Source of the DNA: Octopus bimaculoides
Taxonomy: Eukaryota
DNA: 64,000 nucleotides
Assembly: GCF_001194135.2 (NCBI RefSeq)
Contig: NC_068985.1
Span: 86,852,508 to 86,916,507 of the forward strand
Direction: 5' to 3'
A program made the position numbers and the translations under genes. Of this stretch, positions 31,230 through 51,215 are shown piece by piece (position 1 is the first letter of the stretch; each line of letters begins with the position of its first letter). The notes beneath the pieces are model-generated. The model was not told the DNA's origin. It searched no databases and saw nothing but the letters and a program-made list of their open reading frames with translations.

Positions 31230-32200
31230 ATCATGCCTGCCACATGGAATGTTGGTACCCGTCTATATCTAGACATGTACCAATGTGTGTGTGTGTGCAG
31301 TTTCAGTAGTTCAATATGGACATGGAAACCTGAAATGGACAGAGGAAGACCTAAAAGAGATGGACAGAAAGTCAAGAAAGCTCTTAACGATGCATGGAGC
31401 CCATCATCCACAGAGACACTGAAGAGATGAAGAGAGCAAATGGAGGAAGGGGACTGACAAGTGTGGAAGAATGCATGCATATCGAATTTGAGAGCTTAAT
31501 AAGATACCTAGCCCAAACTAAGGAATGAGAGAGAATTGAGAGCAGAGAAAAAATGGAAAAGAAAGGAAGAAGTACAAAAAGGATCTGAAGAAGAATTATG
31601 TAAGAAGGGACTACACAAACAATTCCATGTAGATACAAAAGAAGTTGCTGGAAAAAATAGGTGGGATTGGCTGATGAAAGGAACACTGGAAAAAGAGACC
31701 AAGAGCACTATACTGGTGGTGCAGGACCAAACTCTGGCCACGAACTGGAGGGTCAACCTTAGGAATGAACAAGTGTCTCTGCTGTGCTGCATTTGTAACA
31801 GAATGGATGAAACCATTGCCCATATCACAAACGAATGCCCTAGACTTGCCCCAAACCACTACAAGTTGTGACAACACGACCAGGTAGCGAAAGTGTTACA
31901 TTGGAAACTGTTTGAAAAGTGGGGGCTACAGAGAAGCAAGACATGGTATGAGCACCAACTGCAGGGAGTGGCAGAGTTGGAGACTAACAAAATCCTCTGG
32001 GATTTCCCAATTCTAACATATCAGGTGCTAGAGCATAACTGGCTGGACCTAGTGGTAGTCGACAAGATGTACCACGTGCTATATTGTTGATGTTGTATGC
32101 CCCTTTGACCCACAAATAGTCAAGAAAGAAGGCGAAAGGTAGATAGATACAACCCTCTTAAGTACAAAATAGCCCGGCTATGGAAAATTAAGAATGATGC
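31230..32200 (+). mobile_element. R4/Dong-like retrotransposon C-terminus (CCHC knuckle and restriction-like endonuclease)
   Basis: WDWLMKGTLEKETKSTILVVQDQ; CCICNRMDETIAHITNEC; HDQVAKVLHWKL; KILWDFPI..EHNWLDLVVVDK; several stops. Confidence 0.9.
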
Positions 32201-37575: not shown

Positions 37576-38325
37576 TGATAATGCATAGCAGGGGATGGCT
37601 GTTCCAATGGCTCTGTCTCACAATCACATTCTCAACACTTTTCAATGAGGAGCACCAATTTCCCTTGACATGATGTATAATCGAAAGACTGAGCATACCA
37701 CTGAAATGATTATTTATTTACTGGTTTCCATTTTCTTCTTCATCTTCTTTCTGTTTACTTTTGAAAATTCATGTTGTTTTGCCCTGAATTATTACCTCCC
37801 TTGATTTTAGCTCTTGCTGATCGAAACATTGTTGTGAGAAAAATATGTATGACCTCATCTTCGAATTTCCTTTTGCCTGACGGCTAAAAGAGACTTTAAC
37901 AAAAATTATATTAAGAGAGATAGATTTTATATCATAAATCATATATCATGTTTCACCCCCATTCTCTTTCTAAACGTATATTCTCGTCGAAGATAGCATA
38001 GAGTTGTATCATGTTGAGAAATCAATTGTGTTTATCATTTCACTAGGTTTTCTGTCTGAAAATAGGAGAAAGCTTCTCTTCCATTCTGTGCTGTGCATGG
38101 CCAACTGGTTAGAGCTGTTAGGATAATGTTGATGAGCACATGAGTTCAACTCCTGGACTCACTGAAGCATTGTCTCTTTGAACAAGGTACTTTATTTCAC
38201 AATGCTCAAGTTTGCTCAGCTGAAAATGAGAACCAGCAAAACCCTGTGGCATCGCATTCTCCCTCAGGATTACACTGAATCAAAGATAAAACTGCTGAGA
38301 GGGTGACTATATCTGCTCATGCCAC

Positions 38326-38940
38326 TTAACCTTCTCAGACCTGGGCCCCTGTGTCTAACTTTACTCTTTGCCTGGACTTCTGCACAAAAATATAAATAGT
38401 TACGTATACAATCCAAGATTAATAATGATAACAGGCAAAATAATGAACAGAATCGCAAAAAACATTCAGGAGAATAACAGTGATAGGCCTATCACTCAAC
38501 TACTGTATTTGTTTAACTAAATTGCTTCTTTACTCATCTTCTTCACCTGTCTGATTGTCAGAATCTCTTTCATTGCCTGAGTAAAGGTAAACTCTTTGTT
38601 TAGAGAATAAATATCCCTAAAATCTTCTTCAAGATTCTAGGTGTTGCTCATTTACCTGATGAAGTGCTGGATTCATTACATGCTTTGTTTAATTACAAAA
38701 ACGTCTGGGTTTTATGTCTTTTTTTTTATTAAAACCAAAAGTAAACATCTAGTGGGGACACCATGTGACAATGAGTCATCAACACATGTGACTACAAGGC
38801 TGCAATATGACTGGCTGTCTATTTTGGGCATTTTATCTTCTTTTCTTTTATGTTTTGTTCATTACAGCTTTAATGGGAACCTGGTAGAGATTAAGTTTAG
38901 GCTATTTCCACAATATCAGGGGACAATGTGATAGAATTAA
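38326..38940. mobile_element. TTAA-bounded ~607-bp module, copy 1 (piggyBac-like non-autonomous element?)
   Basis: Homologous to 56917-57532; similarity starts at TTAA|CCTTCTCAGACCTGG and ends at a second TTAA in both copies; right end only weakly TIR-like. Confidence 0.55.
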
Positions 38941-39054: not shown

Positions 39055-39460
39055 TTCATCATCATCATCATCATCATCATTATCATCATCGTTTAACGTC
39101 TGTTTTCCATGCTGGCATGGTTTGAACAGTTTGACTGAAGTCTAGAGAGCCAGTGACTGCACCAGGCTCCAATCTGTTCTGGCAACGTTTCTACAGCTGG
39201 ACGCCCTTCCTAATGGCAACCACTCCAAGAGTGTAGTGGGTGCTTTTTACGTACCATCAGCACAGGAGCCAGTTAGGTGGGGCTGGCATCGATCACGTTT
39301 AGATAGTGCTTTTTACATGCTACCGGCATGAGAGCAAGTCAGAGGGTACTGTCATCGGCCACATTCAGATGGTGCTTTTTATACACCACTGGCACAGGAG
39401 CCAGTCAGGTGGACCTGGCATCGACCACATTCAGATGGTGCCTTTTATGTGCCACTTTCT
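39055..39460 (-). mobile_element. Family A repeat with about 3.3 internal 66-bp tandem units
   Basis: gtgctttttac/a recurs at 39240, 39306 and 39372. Confidence 0.85.
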
Positions 39461-41110: not shown

Positions 41111-41233
41111 TTATACACTTATATGGTGCAACCTACTGGCTTGCCACTCCTCAGTTAAACCTTCCAAACCATGTCAACATGGAAAGCAGACGTTAAACAA
41201 TGATGATGATGATGATGATGATGATGATATATA

Positions 41234-48418: not shown

Positions 48419-48974
48419 TAAGTAATTAATAAAGTAATTATTAGTAATTAATAAATGTTTTTATTAATTACATATAAATAATTAATAAAACATTAAACTT
48501 CTCTTTGCCTTCTAAATAGTTTTGTTATTTCACAAAGCTACCACTAAACTACCACATTGTTGGAGAAAAACCTTTCTAGAAGTCATTTTCTTCAAAGTTT
48601 CCACAAAGTCATTCACCTTTAGTTCAGTTGACGTCAGCTAGCTGGTTCTTCTTCTACTGTCGACTGTAAAATATCATTAATATAACAGATTCTATGTCTA
48701 TCCTATGTTCCATAGTAAATTTATTTAATTTGTGAATAGATTAACAACTAAAATCTTTAGGTGTTTATCATTGTCAAGTTTTTTTTTTTTATGTAAAATA
48801 AACACTGCTGCTGTGTCAATAATTAGCACAACAAAACTAACAACCAACAAAATGTTAAATATAGAAAGTAACTTATTTCATCTTGTTCTAAGTGCATCAA
48901 AAGTATACAAACAAAGGGTCATAATGATAGTAAAACAGGGGGGAAATAATGAAAGAAGAAGAATACATAGATCA

Positions 48975-49270
48975 TTATCATCATCATCATTGTTTAACGT
49001 CCGTTTTCCATGCTGGCATGGGTTGGACATTTTGACCGAGGACTAGCAAGCCAGGAGGCTGCACTAGGCTCCAGTCTGATTTAGCAAGGTTTCTACAGCT
49101 AGATGCCCTTCCTAATGCCAACCACTCTGAGATTATAGTGGGTGCTTTTTGCATGCTATTAGCATGGGAGCCAGTCAGGCCAAGCTGACATTGGCCAATG
49201 CTCGAATGGTGCTTTTTATGTACCACCAGCATGGGTGCCAGTCAAGTGGCACTGGCATTGGTCATGTTCA
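48975..49270 (-). mobile_element. Family A repeat
   Basis: catcattgtttaacgtccgttttccatgctggcatgggttggac... Confidence 0.9.
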
Positions 49271-50650
49271 AATATATAAAAGTAAATGGCAGTGCAAATA
49301 GGTTCTTGTTTTACTGTCTACAGTCACATGACTGACATTTGGGCCAATCGTTTTATCTTTTATCTTTTACATGTTTTGGTCATTAGGCTGTGACCATGTT
49401 GGGGCATCACCCTGAAGAATTTTAGGATAATGAATGAACCTATTTTTTAAAGCCTGGTACTTATTCTACTGGTCTCTTTTGTCAAACCGCTAAGTTATGG
49501 GGACCTAGGTATACCAACACCAGTTGACTCTCAGTAAAGAACAGTATGAGGTTACCTGTCTGCAGGCTGAGTGAAGTATTTTGCTGAAGAACACAACACA
49601 TCACTGCTCTGGGAATTAAAGCCCTAATATTGTGATCATAAATGCAACACCTTAAGTGCCAGGTCACACACCACTTTTCTCTCTCTCTCTCTCTCTCTGT
49701 CATACACACACACACACACACGCTTACACATATCTTCAAAAAAGACAAAACTTTACTTGTGATTGACAAAGAAATTATGAAGAACTTGATTATGTTGTTT
49801 GAAAGAATTGATTGCTGCATACAGAGCATGGCCTCCGTCTGGGTACAGTCTGCCACATACAACTTCTAATGGGCTAAAAGTATTGGATATTGAAATGATG
49901 AATTAATTGTCTTTCTGTGGATACACTCTGCCTGGAATTTGAGAAATATTTTAACAATGCTGGGATTGAGTTAATCTGAGCATAGTTGAAGAATTAGAAG
50001 AATAGTTTGAAGTGTTTTAAAAGACAGAATTACTTCTACCAATGACATACTTTAGAAAAGTCAGCAGTTTGGAGTGGAACCCCCTCAAGAAATTGATCTG
50101 AGATCAGTTTATGATTCTAGTATGTCATATAGGTATATCCTAAGGGATTAGACCAATCACTCTCAAAAGATATGGCTGAAGGCACCAATGTATCAAAGAA
50201 AGTCATGAATCCTATTGATAAAAAAAAACTTGCAGTGAAAAATCAATGCCATATTCAGTCAGGCTGAGAAAAACGGTATCCATTTCAGCGCTAGAAAAAT
50301 ATTTCATTTATTGTGATCTCAGATTCCTAAAACATTGGAAGCTGAATACCCCTGGGAAAGGAAAGATTGCATGCCAAAGTGAGAATCTGTGCAACATCAC
50401 GGAAAATAATGATTAGTTACACATATAATTCCATGTGTGTCGTACTAAGATAATGACCTTGAGCAGGTGAGTGGTACGATAGATTCTAAGGGCATTTGCA
50501 TGGAGAGAATAAACAGTCATGGTGTTCCAGAGGTAAGATACTTTTTCCTTACTTTTCAGAATAATTGCTGCCAGCTGTGGTTGTTACCATTTTATGTTGA
50601 GTTGATTGTTAAACTGAAAACAAAGCCAAATCCTCCATAATTTGTTTCAA

Positions 50651-50809: not shown

Positions 50810-51215
50810 AGCAAAAAAGTAAAAGCACCCATGCTGTAAAGTGATTGGTATTAGGAAGGGCATCCAGCTGTTGAAACCAGGCCAAAACAGATGACTGGGA
50901 CTTGGTGCAGCCCTCCAGCTTGCTAGCCCCTGTAAAACTGTTCAACCCATGCCAGCATGGAAAAGGACATTGTAGGATGATGATGACAGTGATGACGATG
51001 ATGACAACGATGACGACGACGATGACGACGGTGATGATTATGATATTAACGATAGAAGCTGCACCAGGCCCCACTTGCGTATTTTTGGCAGGGTTTCTAC
51101 AGCTGGATGCCCTTCCTAAGACCAACCACTTTATATAGAGTGCTGGGTGCTTTTTACGTGCAACCAGCACAGGTGCCTTTTATATGGCACTAGCACAGGT
51201 GCCTTTTATGAGGCA
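50810..51215. mobile_element. Two family A copies, tail-to-tail (+ then -)
   Basis: Plus copy at 50810-51045 with (GAT/GAC)n tail; minus copy at 51055-51215. Confidence 0.8.

What the first reader, a model, noticed from the sequence alone, without database searches (positions are those of the whole stretch)
38326..38940. Duplicated ~608-bp TTAA-bounded module with strikingly uneven conservation (copy 2 at 56917-57532)
Seen: two same-orientation copies 18.6 kb apart. Each is bounded by TTAA at homologous positions (607 and 608 bp between the TTAAs) with unrelated flanks. Blocks of identity (75 bp at 38457-38531/57046-57120; 36 bp at 38644-38679/57242-57277; a near-identical first ~70 bp) alternate with heavily diverged stretches, and the right half is much more diverged. 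Established: TTAA duplication is the piggyBac signature. Inference: an old piggyBac-type non-autonomous element. Neutral decay should be fairly uniform, so the perfect blocks suggest selection (exapted regulatory, RNA or exon element), transposase-binding constraint between subfamilies, or patchy gene conversion.
Basis: partly seen in the sequence, partly recalled or inferred. Interest (0 to 1): 0.7.

Follow-up and report, generated by a model that had tools for sequence, protein, structure and literature searches.

The report
TTAA-flanked transposon relic, two copies
Two roughly 610-bp non-coding copies of one mobile-element relic sit 18.6 kb apart in an octopus-like genome, each flanked by TTAA and with a piggyBac-style left end. 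Their patchy conservation is real, but it is more likely a by-product of the repeat family's own history than a sign of host function.

Summary
Copy 1 (38326-38940) and copy 2 (56917-57532) lie in the same orientation. They align from a shared TTAA to a shared TTAA, with 607 and 608 bp between. Their flanks are unrelated and non-colinear. Perfect runs of 75 bp and 36 bp sit inside a 73%-identical alignment, whereas 5000 shuffles never gave a run above 38.

It is a dispersed, non-coding repeat, not a segmental duplication. The left end (TTAA|CCTT) and the 5'-YY..RR-3' polarity fit piggyBac and exclude Kolobok. A convincing terminal inverted repeat is missing, the right terminus is degenerate, no transposase lies nearby, and the window holds only these two copies.

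I found no support for an exon, a structured RNA, a snoRNA or miRNA, a tRNA-SINE head or a retroelement tail.

The cause of the unevenness cannot be settled from two copies. The extreme left terminus is among the identical parts while the right terminus has decayed. Perfect 75- and 36-nt identity also looks more like recent copying than like selection. I therefore favour family-internal history: mosaic gene conversion or template switching, or cis-acting left-end modules. Host exaptation stays possible at about 10%. No cephalopod genome could be searched. My verdict is an ordinary new member of a known kind, of modest interest.

The parts
38326..38940 (+). Copy 1 of the repeat, including both flanking TTAAs
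   Evidence: homologous to copy 2 from TTAA to TTAA, with unrelated flanks.
56917..57532 (+). Copy 2 of the repeat, including both flanking TTAAs
38326..38329 (.). Left TTAA of copy 1 (putative target-site duplication). Its counterparts are 38937-38940, 56917-56920 and 57529-57532.
   Evidence: Homology starts and stops at these tetranucleotides. TTAA frequency is 0.0064 per nt.
38330..38395 (+). Left terminal block (copy 2: 56921-56986). It begins CCTTCTCAGACCTGG, is about 90% identical, and is the most G+C-rich part (0.46-0.49).
   Evidence: The terminal 19-mer occurs only at these two places and never inverted.
38396..38428 (+). Hyper-diverged patch between two conserved blocks (copy 2: 56987-57016). 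It is about 54% identical with a 3-nt indel.
38429..38531 (+). Core block (copy 2: 57017-57120). It is 96% identical and contains the 75-bp perfect run 38457-38531.
38479..38496 (.). Perfect 18-nt palindrome AGTGATAGGCCTATCACT inside the core (copy 2: 57068-57085)
   Evidence: only these two matches in the window at up to 3 mismatches, against 0.01 expected..
38532..38643 (+). Moderately diverged middle (copy 2: 57121-57241). It is about 65-75% identical with 1- and 8-nt indels. Its 14-nt run is not exceptional.
38644..38679 (+). 36-bp perfect block (copy 2: 57242-57277) containing the dyad TGATGAA-N8-TTCATTA
38680..38936 (+). Diverged right arm (copy 2: 57278-57528). It is about 62% identical, and its divergence is consistent with homogeneous decay. 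It ends ...AGAA|TTAA in copy 1 and ...AAAG|TTAA in copy 2.
   Evidence: Transitions to transversions are 54:36.
38441..38447 (-). TTCATTA heptamer, site 1. The other sites are 38657 (variant TTCATCA, minus strand), 38672 (+) and 38858 (+). The homologous sites in copy 2 are 57029, 57255, 57270 and 57449.
   Evidence: three exact occurrences per copy against 0.3 expected per 615 bp. The orientation pattern - - + + is symmetric about the centre. Suggestive only, because the motif was chosen post hoc.

Best explanation
These are two independent insertions, at TTAA sites, of one non-autonomous, non-coding DNA-transposon family of piggyBac type. Both are now most likely immobile relics, because the right terminus has decayed.

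The uneven conservation comes from the repeat family's own history, not from a host function. The identical blocks are the left terminus, a 105-bp core carrying an 18-bp palindrome, and a 36-bp dyad block. These segments share a much more recent common ancestor than the rest.

I think the most likely route is copying between family members. That means ectopic gene conversion or template switching during gap repair, quite possibly between these two linked, co-oriented copies. The blocks may also have been cis-acting, transposase-binding modules while the lineage was active. The right arm simply shows the old, roughly uniform neutral decay.

Shown: the boundaries, the end motif and polarity, the lack of coding or RNA-structure signal, and the statistical reality of the blocks. 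Inferred: the superfamily, the immobility and the mechanism behind the blocks.
For: 1. TTAA lies at all four junctions, and homology starts and stops there. The flanks are unrelated, non-colinear and unique in the window.
2. The left end TTAA|CCTTCT matches the piggyBac CC[C/T]T hallmark (PMC2872659). It matches 5 of 6 positions of the PBLE terminal motif (PMC5381638). The 5'-YY..RR-3' polarity fits piggyBac rather than Kolobok.
3. piggyBac families are present and recently active in Octopus: 36 families and 15.6 Mb in O. vulgaris. The window is octopus-like.
4. The element is non-coding, with stops shared by both copies in every frame and no frame favoured in tblastx.
5. The perfectly conserved parts include the extreme terminus, which matters only for transposition, while the other terminus has decayed. 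That is hard to reconcile with host selection acting on internal blocks.
6. Zero differences in 75 and 36 consecutive positions, next to segments with about 0.5 substitutions per site, looks like recent copying rather than selection, which normally leaves degenerate positions.
7. Three tiers of identity (100%, about 90% and about 62-75%) fit segments of different age.
8. The copies are 18.6 kb apart in the same orientation, which favours ectopic exchange.
9. There is a precedent in the coral CMITEs: TTAA-flanked, piggyBac-linked, with an internal 75-base region better conserved than the TIRs.
Against: - No convincing TIR. Copy 1 gives 14/20 after a 2-nt offset (empirical P about 0.02) and copy 2 is at chance.
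- The right end is AGAA or AAAG rather than ARGG.
- No autonomous partner was seen.
- With only two copies, family size and subfamily structure are unknown.
- Conversion tracts as short as 36 bp, flanked by roughly 55-65% identity and by indels, would be unusual, because heteroduplex rejection should hinder them.
- The blocks show no G+C enrichment, which biased gene conversion might leave.
- Palindromic and dyad motifs and the repeated TTCATTA heptamer inside the blocks are what protein-binding constraint would predict. Constraint, at the element or the host level, is therefore not excluded.
Confidence: 0.55

Rival explanations
1. Two active subfamilies under element-level selection. Both copies are young insertions from two deeply diverged master lineages mobilised by the same transposase. 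The blocks are cis-required binding sites kept by selection for transposition.
For: The left terminus is perfectly kept. The blocks contain an 18-bp palindrome, a 7-N8-7 dyad, and a heptamer repeated in a - - + + arrangement. All four TTAAs are intact. CMITE is a precedent. piggyBac ends are known to carry sub-terminal and palindromic repeats.
Against: If the copies were young and mobile, the right terminus should be as well kept as the left. It is about 60% identical between copies, carries indels, and lacks the ARGG/TIR match. Seventy-five invariant positions is more than any known binding site needs.
Confidence: 0.17
2. Host-level purifying selection (exaptation). The blocks are regulatory DNA, for example binding sites for a dimeric factor, kept in both old copies.
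For: There is a very strong rate contrast, about 4% against about 38% divergence. Dyad-symmetric motifs are present. An AP-1-like ATGAGTCAT is kept in the right arm.
Against: The conserved part starts at the very transposon terminus. The short runs in the right arm are not statistically exceptional. Both of the only two copies would have to be exapted. There is ascertainment bias, because the pair was noticed for its identical strings. No expression or chromatin data are available.
Confidence: 0.1
3. A different element class. One option is the 3' part of a retroelement or SINE lying on the minus strand, with a sharp 3' end at 38330 and a fading 5' end. The other is a member of another TTAA-duplicating superfamily such as Kolobok or Sola.
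For: Conservation is one-sided, and no clear TIR was found. Sola1 and Kolobok families exist in Octopus.
Against: Homology runs right up to a TTAA at the far end in both copies, and the lengths are equal at 607 and 608 bp. That is not the variable 5' truncation with variable TSDs expected of a retroelement. There is no poly(A) or microsatellite tail. There is no tRNA or other pol III head. There is no conserved ORF. The Kolobok termini RR..YY are not met. Sola ends were not tested.
Confidence: 0.1
4. The conserved blocks are a functional RNA or an exon, such as a snoRNA, a miRNA precursor or a coding micro-exon, carried by the repeat.
For: There are weak C/D-box snoRNA-like Rfam hits at homologous positions, at 27 and 18 bits. 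Splice-site-like strings flank some blocks (read directly from the sequence).
Against: The Rfam scores are far below the gathering threshold of 80 bits. No block or whole copy folds better than shuffles, with z between -1.6 and +1.1. Stops are shared in the reading frames, and there is no synonymous-type variation.
Confidence: 0.04
5. A plain segmental or tandem duplication, or an assembly artefact.
For: There are only two copies, close together and in the same orientation. The window is a draft with many N gaps.
Against: Similarity stops at the TTAAs on both sides. The neighbourhoods share only other interspersed repeats, in non-colinear order. The modules contain no Ns. About 0.5 substitutions per site in the right arm is not an assembly artefact.
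Confidence: 0.03

Closest known systems
piggyBac-derived MITEs with a conserved internal region (coral CMITE families; Wang et al. 2010, PMC2872659)
   Same: Both have TTAA flanks, a CC[C/T]T terminal motif and no coding capacity. In both, an internal block (75 bases in CMITE) is better conserved than the ends or arms, with cause unknown. Some CMITE families also have TIRs reduced to the outermost few bases.
   Different: CMITEs are about 100 bp, occur in about 1600 copies, and still have recognisable matching termini at both ends. This element is about 610 bp, has three separate blocks, a well-kept left end and a degenerate right end. Its copy number is unknown.
Canonical piggyBac-like elements (PBLE; Bouallegue et al. 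2017, PMC5381638)
   Same: Both have a TTAA target duplication, a C-rich 5' terminus and sub-terminal or palindromic repeats in the ends.
   Different: PBLEs have 12-19 bp TIRs (minimum about 5 bp), a transposase ORF and a length of 1.7-8.5 kb. None of these is present here.
Kolobok / T2-type MITEs (Kolobok as described in PMC9587614; T2-type MITEs from my own knowledge)
   Same: Both make a TTAA-specific 4-bp target duplication, and Kolobok is present in molluscs.
   Different: Kolobok termini are 5'-RR..YY-3'. This element is 5'-CC..AA/AG-3', so that defining feature is not met.
Ancient repeat families under host selection, e.g. human MER121 or LF-SINE-type exaptations (from my own knowledge, not tested here)
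   Same: Parts of a dispersed repeat are far better conserved than neutral decay allows.
   Different: Those cases rest on cross-species orthologous conservation of many copies. Here there are only two paralogous copies in one genome and no orthologues.

Membership tests
piggyBac superfamily (non-autonomous derivative) | TTAA target-site duplication at both ends | tested here: met
   All four junctions are TTAA. Homology begins and ends there. Background TTAA frequency is 0.0064 per nt.
piggyBac superfamily (non-autonomous derivative) | 5' terminus CC[C/T]T, or C[C/A/T][C/A/T][T/G/A][T/A/G][T/G/A] | tested here: met
   The left end is CCTTCT in both copies. CCYT is met, and 5 of 6 positions of the looser motif are met.
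piggyBac superfamily (non-autonomous derivative) | Complementary 3' terminus (A[A/G]GG) and a TIR of 12-19 bp (minimum about 5) | tested here: inconclusive
   The right ends are AGAA in copy 1 and AAAG in copy 2. Copy 1 matches 14/20 after a 2-nt offset, and 40 of 1990 random TTAA pairs match as well. Copy 2 is at chance. The unconstrained local test is at chance. No inverted terminal 19-mer and no ARGGTTAA lies downstream. This is compatible with decay but not demonstrated.
piggyBac superfamily (non-autonomous derivative) | An autonomous partner with the same ends that encodes a piggyBac (DDE_Tnp_1_7) transposase | not testable with these tools
   There is no transposase-like ORF in the neighbourhoods or among the window's ORFs. 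No cephalopod genome could be searched.
piggyBac superfamily (non-autonomous derivative) | Precise excision, or an empty site with a single TTAA | not testable with these tools
   The flanks are unique in the window. No second haplotype or related species was available.
MITE (generic) | Short (under about 800 bp), non-coding, homogeneous in size | tested here: met
   607 and 608 bp between the TTAAs. No conserved ORF.
MITE (generic) | High copy number | not testable with these tools
   The window holds two copies. Scans of metagenome, viral and prokaryote collections, a protein word search and a literature string search all found nothing.
Kolobok superfamily | TTAA TSD together with termini 5'-RR..YY-3' | tested here: not met
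   The TSD is met, but the termini are CC..AA/AG, i.e. YY..RR.
SINE or LINE 3' fragment (minus strand) | A pol III head or RT ORF upstream, a 3' tail (poly-A or short repeats), and variable-length TSDs with variable 5' truncation | tested here: not met
   No tRNA, 5S or 7SL signal. No ORF signal. No tail. Both copies end at an aligned TTAA and have equal length.
Segmental duplication | Similarity continuing colinearly into the flanks | tested here: not met
Structured non-coding RNA (snoRNA, miRNA precursor) | A fold more stable than shuffles, or a match to a curated family at its threshold | tested here: not met
   z-scores lie between -1.6 and +1.1. The best Rfam hit scores 27 bits against a gathering score of 80.

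The most novel reading that the evidence does not exclude
The three blocks are sequence-specific protein-binding modules kept by purifying selection in the host. They are the left transposon end, the core with the AGTGATAGGCCTATCACT palindrome, and the TGATGAA-N8-TTCATTA dyad. One possibility is that they serve as landing sites for a domesticated piggyBac-derived protein or as a dispersed cis-regulatory module in octopus. Parts of this repeat family would then behave like a conserved non-coding element family.
Probability: 0.1. Interest if true: 0.6.

Novelty: new member of a known kind. Interest (0 to 1): 0.25.

Why it matters
As it stands, this is a routine annotation item. It is an unclassified, TTAA-flanked, piggyBac-polarity non-autonomous element in a cephalopod genome that is already known to be rich in transposons, including piggyBac.

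Its one uncommon trait is perfect 75- and 36-bp islands, plus an intact left terminus, inside an otherwise roughly 62-75% identical pair. This gives a clean small test case. A genome-wide profile would show whether such islands come from ectopic conversion between linked copies, from cis-acting transposon modules, or from host exaptation.

Only the last outcome would be of wider interest, as a TE-derived regulatory or protein-binding module in octopus.

Tried and rejected
- Segmental duplication: rejected. The flanks are non-colinear.
- Further or diverged copies in the window: none by blastn with word size 7 or by nhmmer --max.
- Paralogous empty sites for the flanks: none.
- Coding exon or decayed transposase C-terminus on the minus strand. 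I first read apparent ORF remnants and splice-like sites there. Six-frame comparison and tblastx show stops shared by both copies in every frame and no favoured frame. Rejected.
- Transposase or other domains next to the copies or elsewhere in the window. Only LINE-type fragments were found.
- Structured RNA: whole copies and each block, on both strands, fold no better than shuffles.
- Rfam at gathering threshold: nothing. At E-value threshold: only sub-threshold C/D snoRNA-like hits.
- tRNA-derived SINE head: ARAGORN found none, and reading for A and B boxes by eye was unconvincing.
- Helitron ends (5'-TC, 3'-CTRR, insertion between A and T): they do not fit the junctions, read directly from the sequence.
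- TIR: the unconstrained local test is at chance. The end-anchored test is weak for copy 1 only.
- G+C enrichment of the blocks, as a possible trace of biased conversion: absent.
- Outside copies. Exact-pattern scans with block or terminus probes found nothing in JGI metagenomes, IMG/VR or prokaryote genomes.
- Protein word search with an ORF spanning the conserved parts: nothing.
- Fetching octopus DNA through a homologous protein failed, because that protein is not on record. The RT search returned only 4 hits. The protein collection therefore holds almost no octopus genomic ORFs, and I did not spend the third search.
- Literature string search for the terminus and the palindrome: no paper. 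The supplement of the O. vulgaris repeat paper holds no sequences.

Full report
**1. The observation**

The two stretches are as described. Copy 1 (38326-38940) and copy 2 (56917-57532) lie in the same orientation, 18.6 kb apart.

In a MAFFT alignment that includes about 75 nt of flank on each side, identity is at background (6-8 matches per 20 columns) up to the shared CTTAACC. It jumps to 19/20 exactly there.

The perfect runs are:
- 75 bp at 38457-38531/57046-57120;
- 36 bp at 38644-38679/57242-57277;
- 20 bp at the left end;
- smaller runs of 17, 14 and 12 bp.

From TTAA to TTAA the identity is 457/627 (73%). In 5000 shuffles of the match/mismatch string, the longest run had median 17 and maximum 38. 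The expected number of runs of 75 or more is 8e-9. The unevenness is therefore real.

By compartment:

| Compartment | Identity |
|---|---|
| Left 70 columns | 90% |
| 35-column patch | 54% |
| 105-column core | 96% |
| Middle | about 65% |
| 40 columns around the 36-bp run | 93% |
| Right 263 columns | 62% |

Inside the right arm and the middle, the short identical runs of 11-14 nt are what homogeneous divergence would give. There are thus three exceptional blocks, not a continuum.

**2. Boundaries**

The right edge looked fuzzy in the ungapped alignment. With small indels allowed, the last 30 nt before the right TTAA are homologous (31 of 5000 shuffles score as well). The 32 nt beyond it are at chance, like the left flank.

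TTAA occurs at 0.0064 per base in this window. An aligned TTAA at the exact point where homology stops, in both copies, is unlikely to be accidental. Between the TTAAs lie 607 and 608 bp.

The two neighbourhoods share only other interspersed repeats, in non-colinear positions, at both the DNA and the translated level. The immediate flanks are unique in the window. This is a dispersed repeat, not a segmental duplication. The window holds only these two copies.

**3. What kind of element**

It does not code. Both copies share stops in all six frames, and tblastx gives equally good matches in every frame. No domain-bearing ORF lies nearby.

The left junction reads TTAA|CCTTCTCAGACCTGG. CC[C/T]T directly after a TTAA is described as the hallmark of piggyBac ends (PMC2872659). 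CCTTCT also fits 5 of 6 positions of the looser PBLE motif (PMC5381638).

The other well-known TTAA-duplicating superfamily, Kolobok, has termini 5'-RR..YY-3' (PMC9587614). Here the ends are CC..AA and CC..AG, which is the piggyBac polarity.

piggyBac families are present and recently active in Octopus. The window is octopus-like, because an RT-like ORF at 21870-22397 best matches an O. bimaculoides protein.

Against full membership:
- A local comparison of the left 60 nt with the reverse complement of the right end is at chance.
- No inverted copy of the terminal 19-mer exists anywhere in the window.
- No ARGGTTAA right end lies downstream of either copy.
- An end-anchored test gives 14/20 for copy 1, but only after a 2-nt offset, and 2% of random TTAA pairs in the window match as well. 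It gives nothing for copy 2.

I therefore file it as a TTAA-flanked element of piggyBac polarity whose TIR is not demonstrated. It works like a piggyBac MITE, but membership is unproven.

**4. Alternatives for the element type**

I considered a retroelement or SINE 3' end on the minus strand, because conservation is one-sided. The evidence is against it:
- both copies end at an aligned TTAA and have equal length;
- there is no tail;
- there is no tRNA or other pol III head;
- there is no ORF trace.

Helitron junction rules do not fit either.

**5. What the blocks contain**

- The core holds a perfect 18-nt palindrome, AGTGATAGGCCTATCACT. It is found nowhere else in the window, even at 3 mismatches.
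- The 36-bp block holds the dyad TGATGAA-N8-TTCATTA.
- The heptamer TTCATTA occurs three times per copy, plus one variant, at homologous sites. About 0.3 are expected per 615 bp. The orientation pattern is - - + +, symmetric about the centre.

This layout resembles multi-site protein binding, as in transposon ends. piggyBac-like elements do carry sub-terminal and even palindromic repeats. However, I picked the motif after seeing it, so it is a lead and not a test.

None of the blocks, nor the whole copies on either strand, folds better than shuffles. Rfam gives only sub-threshold C/D-box-like hits. The blocks are not G+C-enriched.

**6. Why the conservation is uneven**

Three readings remain.

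(a) Recent copying. This means ectopic gene conversion, or template switching during gap repair, between family members and possibly between these two linked, co-oriented copies. It explains perfect identity over 75 and 36 nt, the tiers of identity (100%, about 90%, 62-75%), and why the extreme left terminus is identical while the right terminus has decayed. Its weak points are the shortness of the 36-bp tract amid strong heterology and the absence of a G+C trace.

(b) Element-level constraint in two subfamilies mobilised by one transposase. It fits the motif content and the CMITE precedent. It predicts an equally well-kept right terminus, which is not seen.

(c) Host-level selection. It fits the rate contrast. 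It does not explain why conservation begins at the transposon tip. It would need both of the only two copies to be exapted. The pair was also noticed precisely because of its identical strings.

I put about 0.55 on a piggyBac-type relic whose pattern reflects family-internal history with copying as the main cause. I put 0.17 on (b) as the sole cause and 0.10 on (c). The remainder goes to another element class, a carried RNA or exon, or an artefact.

**7. Limits**

The decisive data are genome-wide copies, subfamilies, an autonomous partner and orthologous loci. None could be obtained. Exact-pattern scans of JGI metagenomes, IMG/VR and prokaryote genomes found nothing. A protein word search with an ORF across the conserved parts also found nothing. 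The protein collection evidently holds almost no octopus genomic ORFs. No paper contains the terminus or palindrome strings.

**8. Verdict**

This is an ordinary new member of a known kind, with one uncommon and still unexplained feature. Interest is modest unless cross-species data show that the blocks are under selection.

Noticed in passing
window 39056-39450, with relatives at 48971-49273, 50840-51195, 41126-41219, 10754-11068 and 21334-21620: An abundant dispersed repeat family. It has a (TCA)n/(ATG)n microsatellite next to a ...CCATGCTGGCATGG... body. At 39239-39447 there are 3.2 tandem copies of a 66-bp unit. It is probably one of the high-copy octopus SINE-like elements. One copy starts about 115 bp to the right of copy 1.
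   Followed up: partly
window 21870-22397 (-) and 31536-31868 (+): These are LINE-type relics. A 175-aa RT-C-terminal-like ORF has its named best hit in an uncharacterised Octopus bimaculoides protein (74% identity over a third of the query). A zf-RVT match scores just under the Pfam cut-off. This is the only evidence I obtained on the organism.
   Followed up: partly
window about 17.2-17.7, 19.2-19.9, 20.5-21.3, 25.1-25.8, 40.3-40.8, 53.2-53.7 and 61.2-61.9 kb: There are 3,856 N in several assembly gaps, nearly all embedded in (TA)n/(CA)n/(TATG)n microsatellites. The N runs produce the spurious 'inverted repeats' I1-I4 and the long X-filled ORFs.
   Followed up: no
window 38771-38779 and 57362-57370: A palindromic AP-1/GCN4-type site, ATGAGTCAT, lies inside the 12-nt identical run ACAATGAGTCAT in the otherwise diverged right arm. 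A run of that length is not statistically exceptional there.
   Followed up: partly
window 38416-38493 (+) and 57007-57082 (+): Sub-threshold Rfam hits to a C/D-box snoRNA model (TtnuCD20, 27 and 18 bits against a gathering score of 80) fall at homologous positions of both copies. The C-box-like string is AUGAUAA/AUGAUAG, with no terminal stem. It is probably compositional.
   Followed up: partly
window 38100-38170: The left flank of copy 1 contains a tRNA-like stretch (GGTTAGAGC...GAGTTCAACTCCTGG, B-box-like). Copy 1 may therefore sit just downstream of, or inside, a tRNA-derived SINE. ARAGORN and Rfam report nothing there.
   Followed up: no
window 38396-38428 and 56987-57016: A patch of about 33 nt between the two best-conserved blocks is close to random similarity (54%, with a 3-nt indel). 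It looks more like a replaced segment than like point divergence, which would fit a mosaic origin.
   Followed up: no
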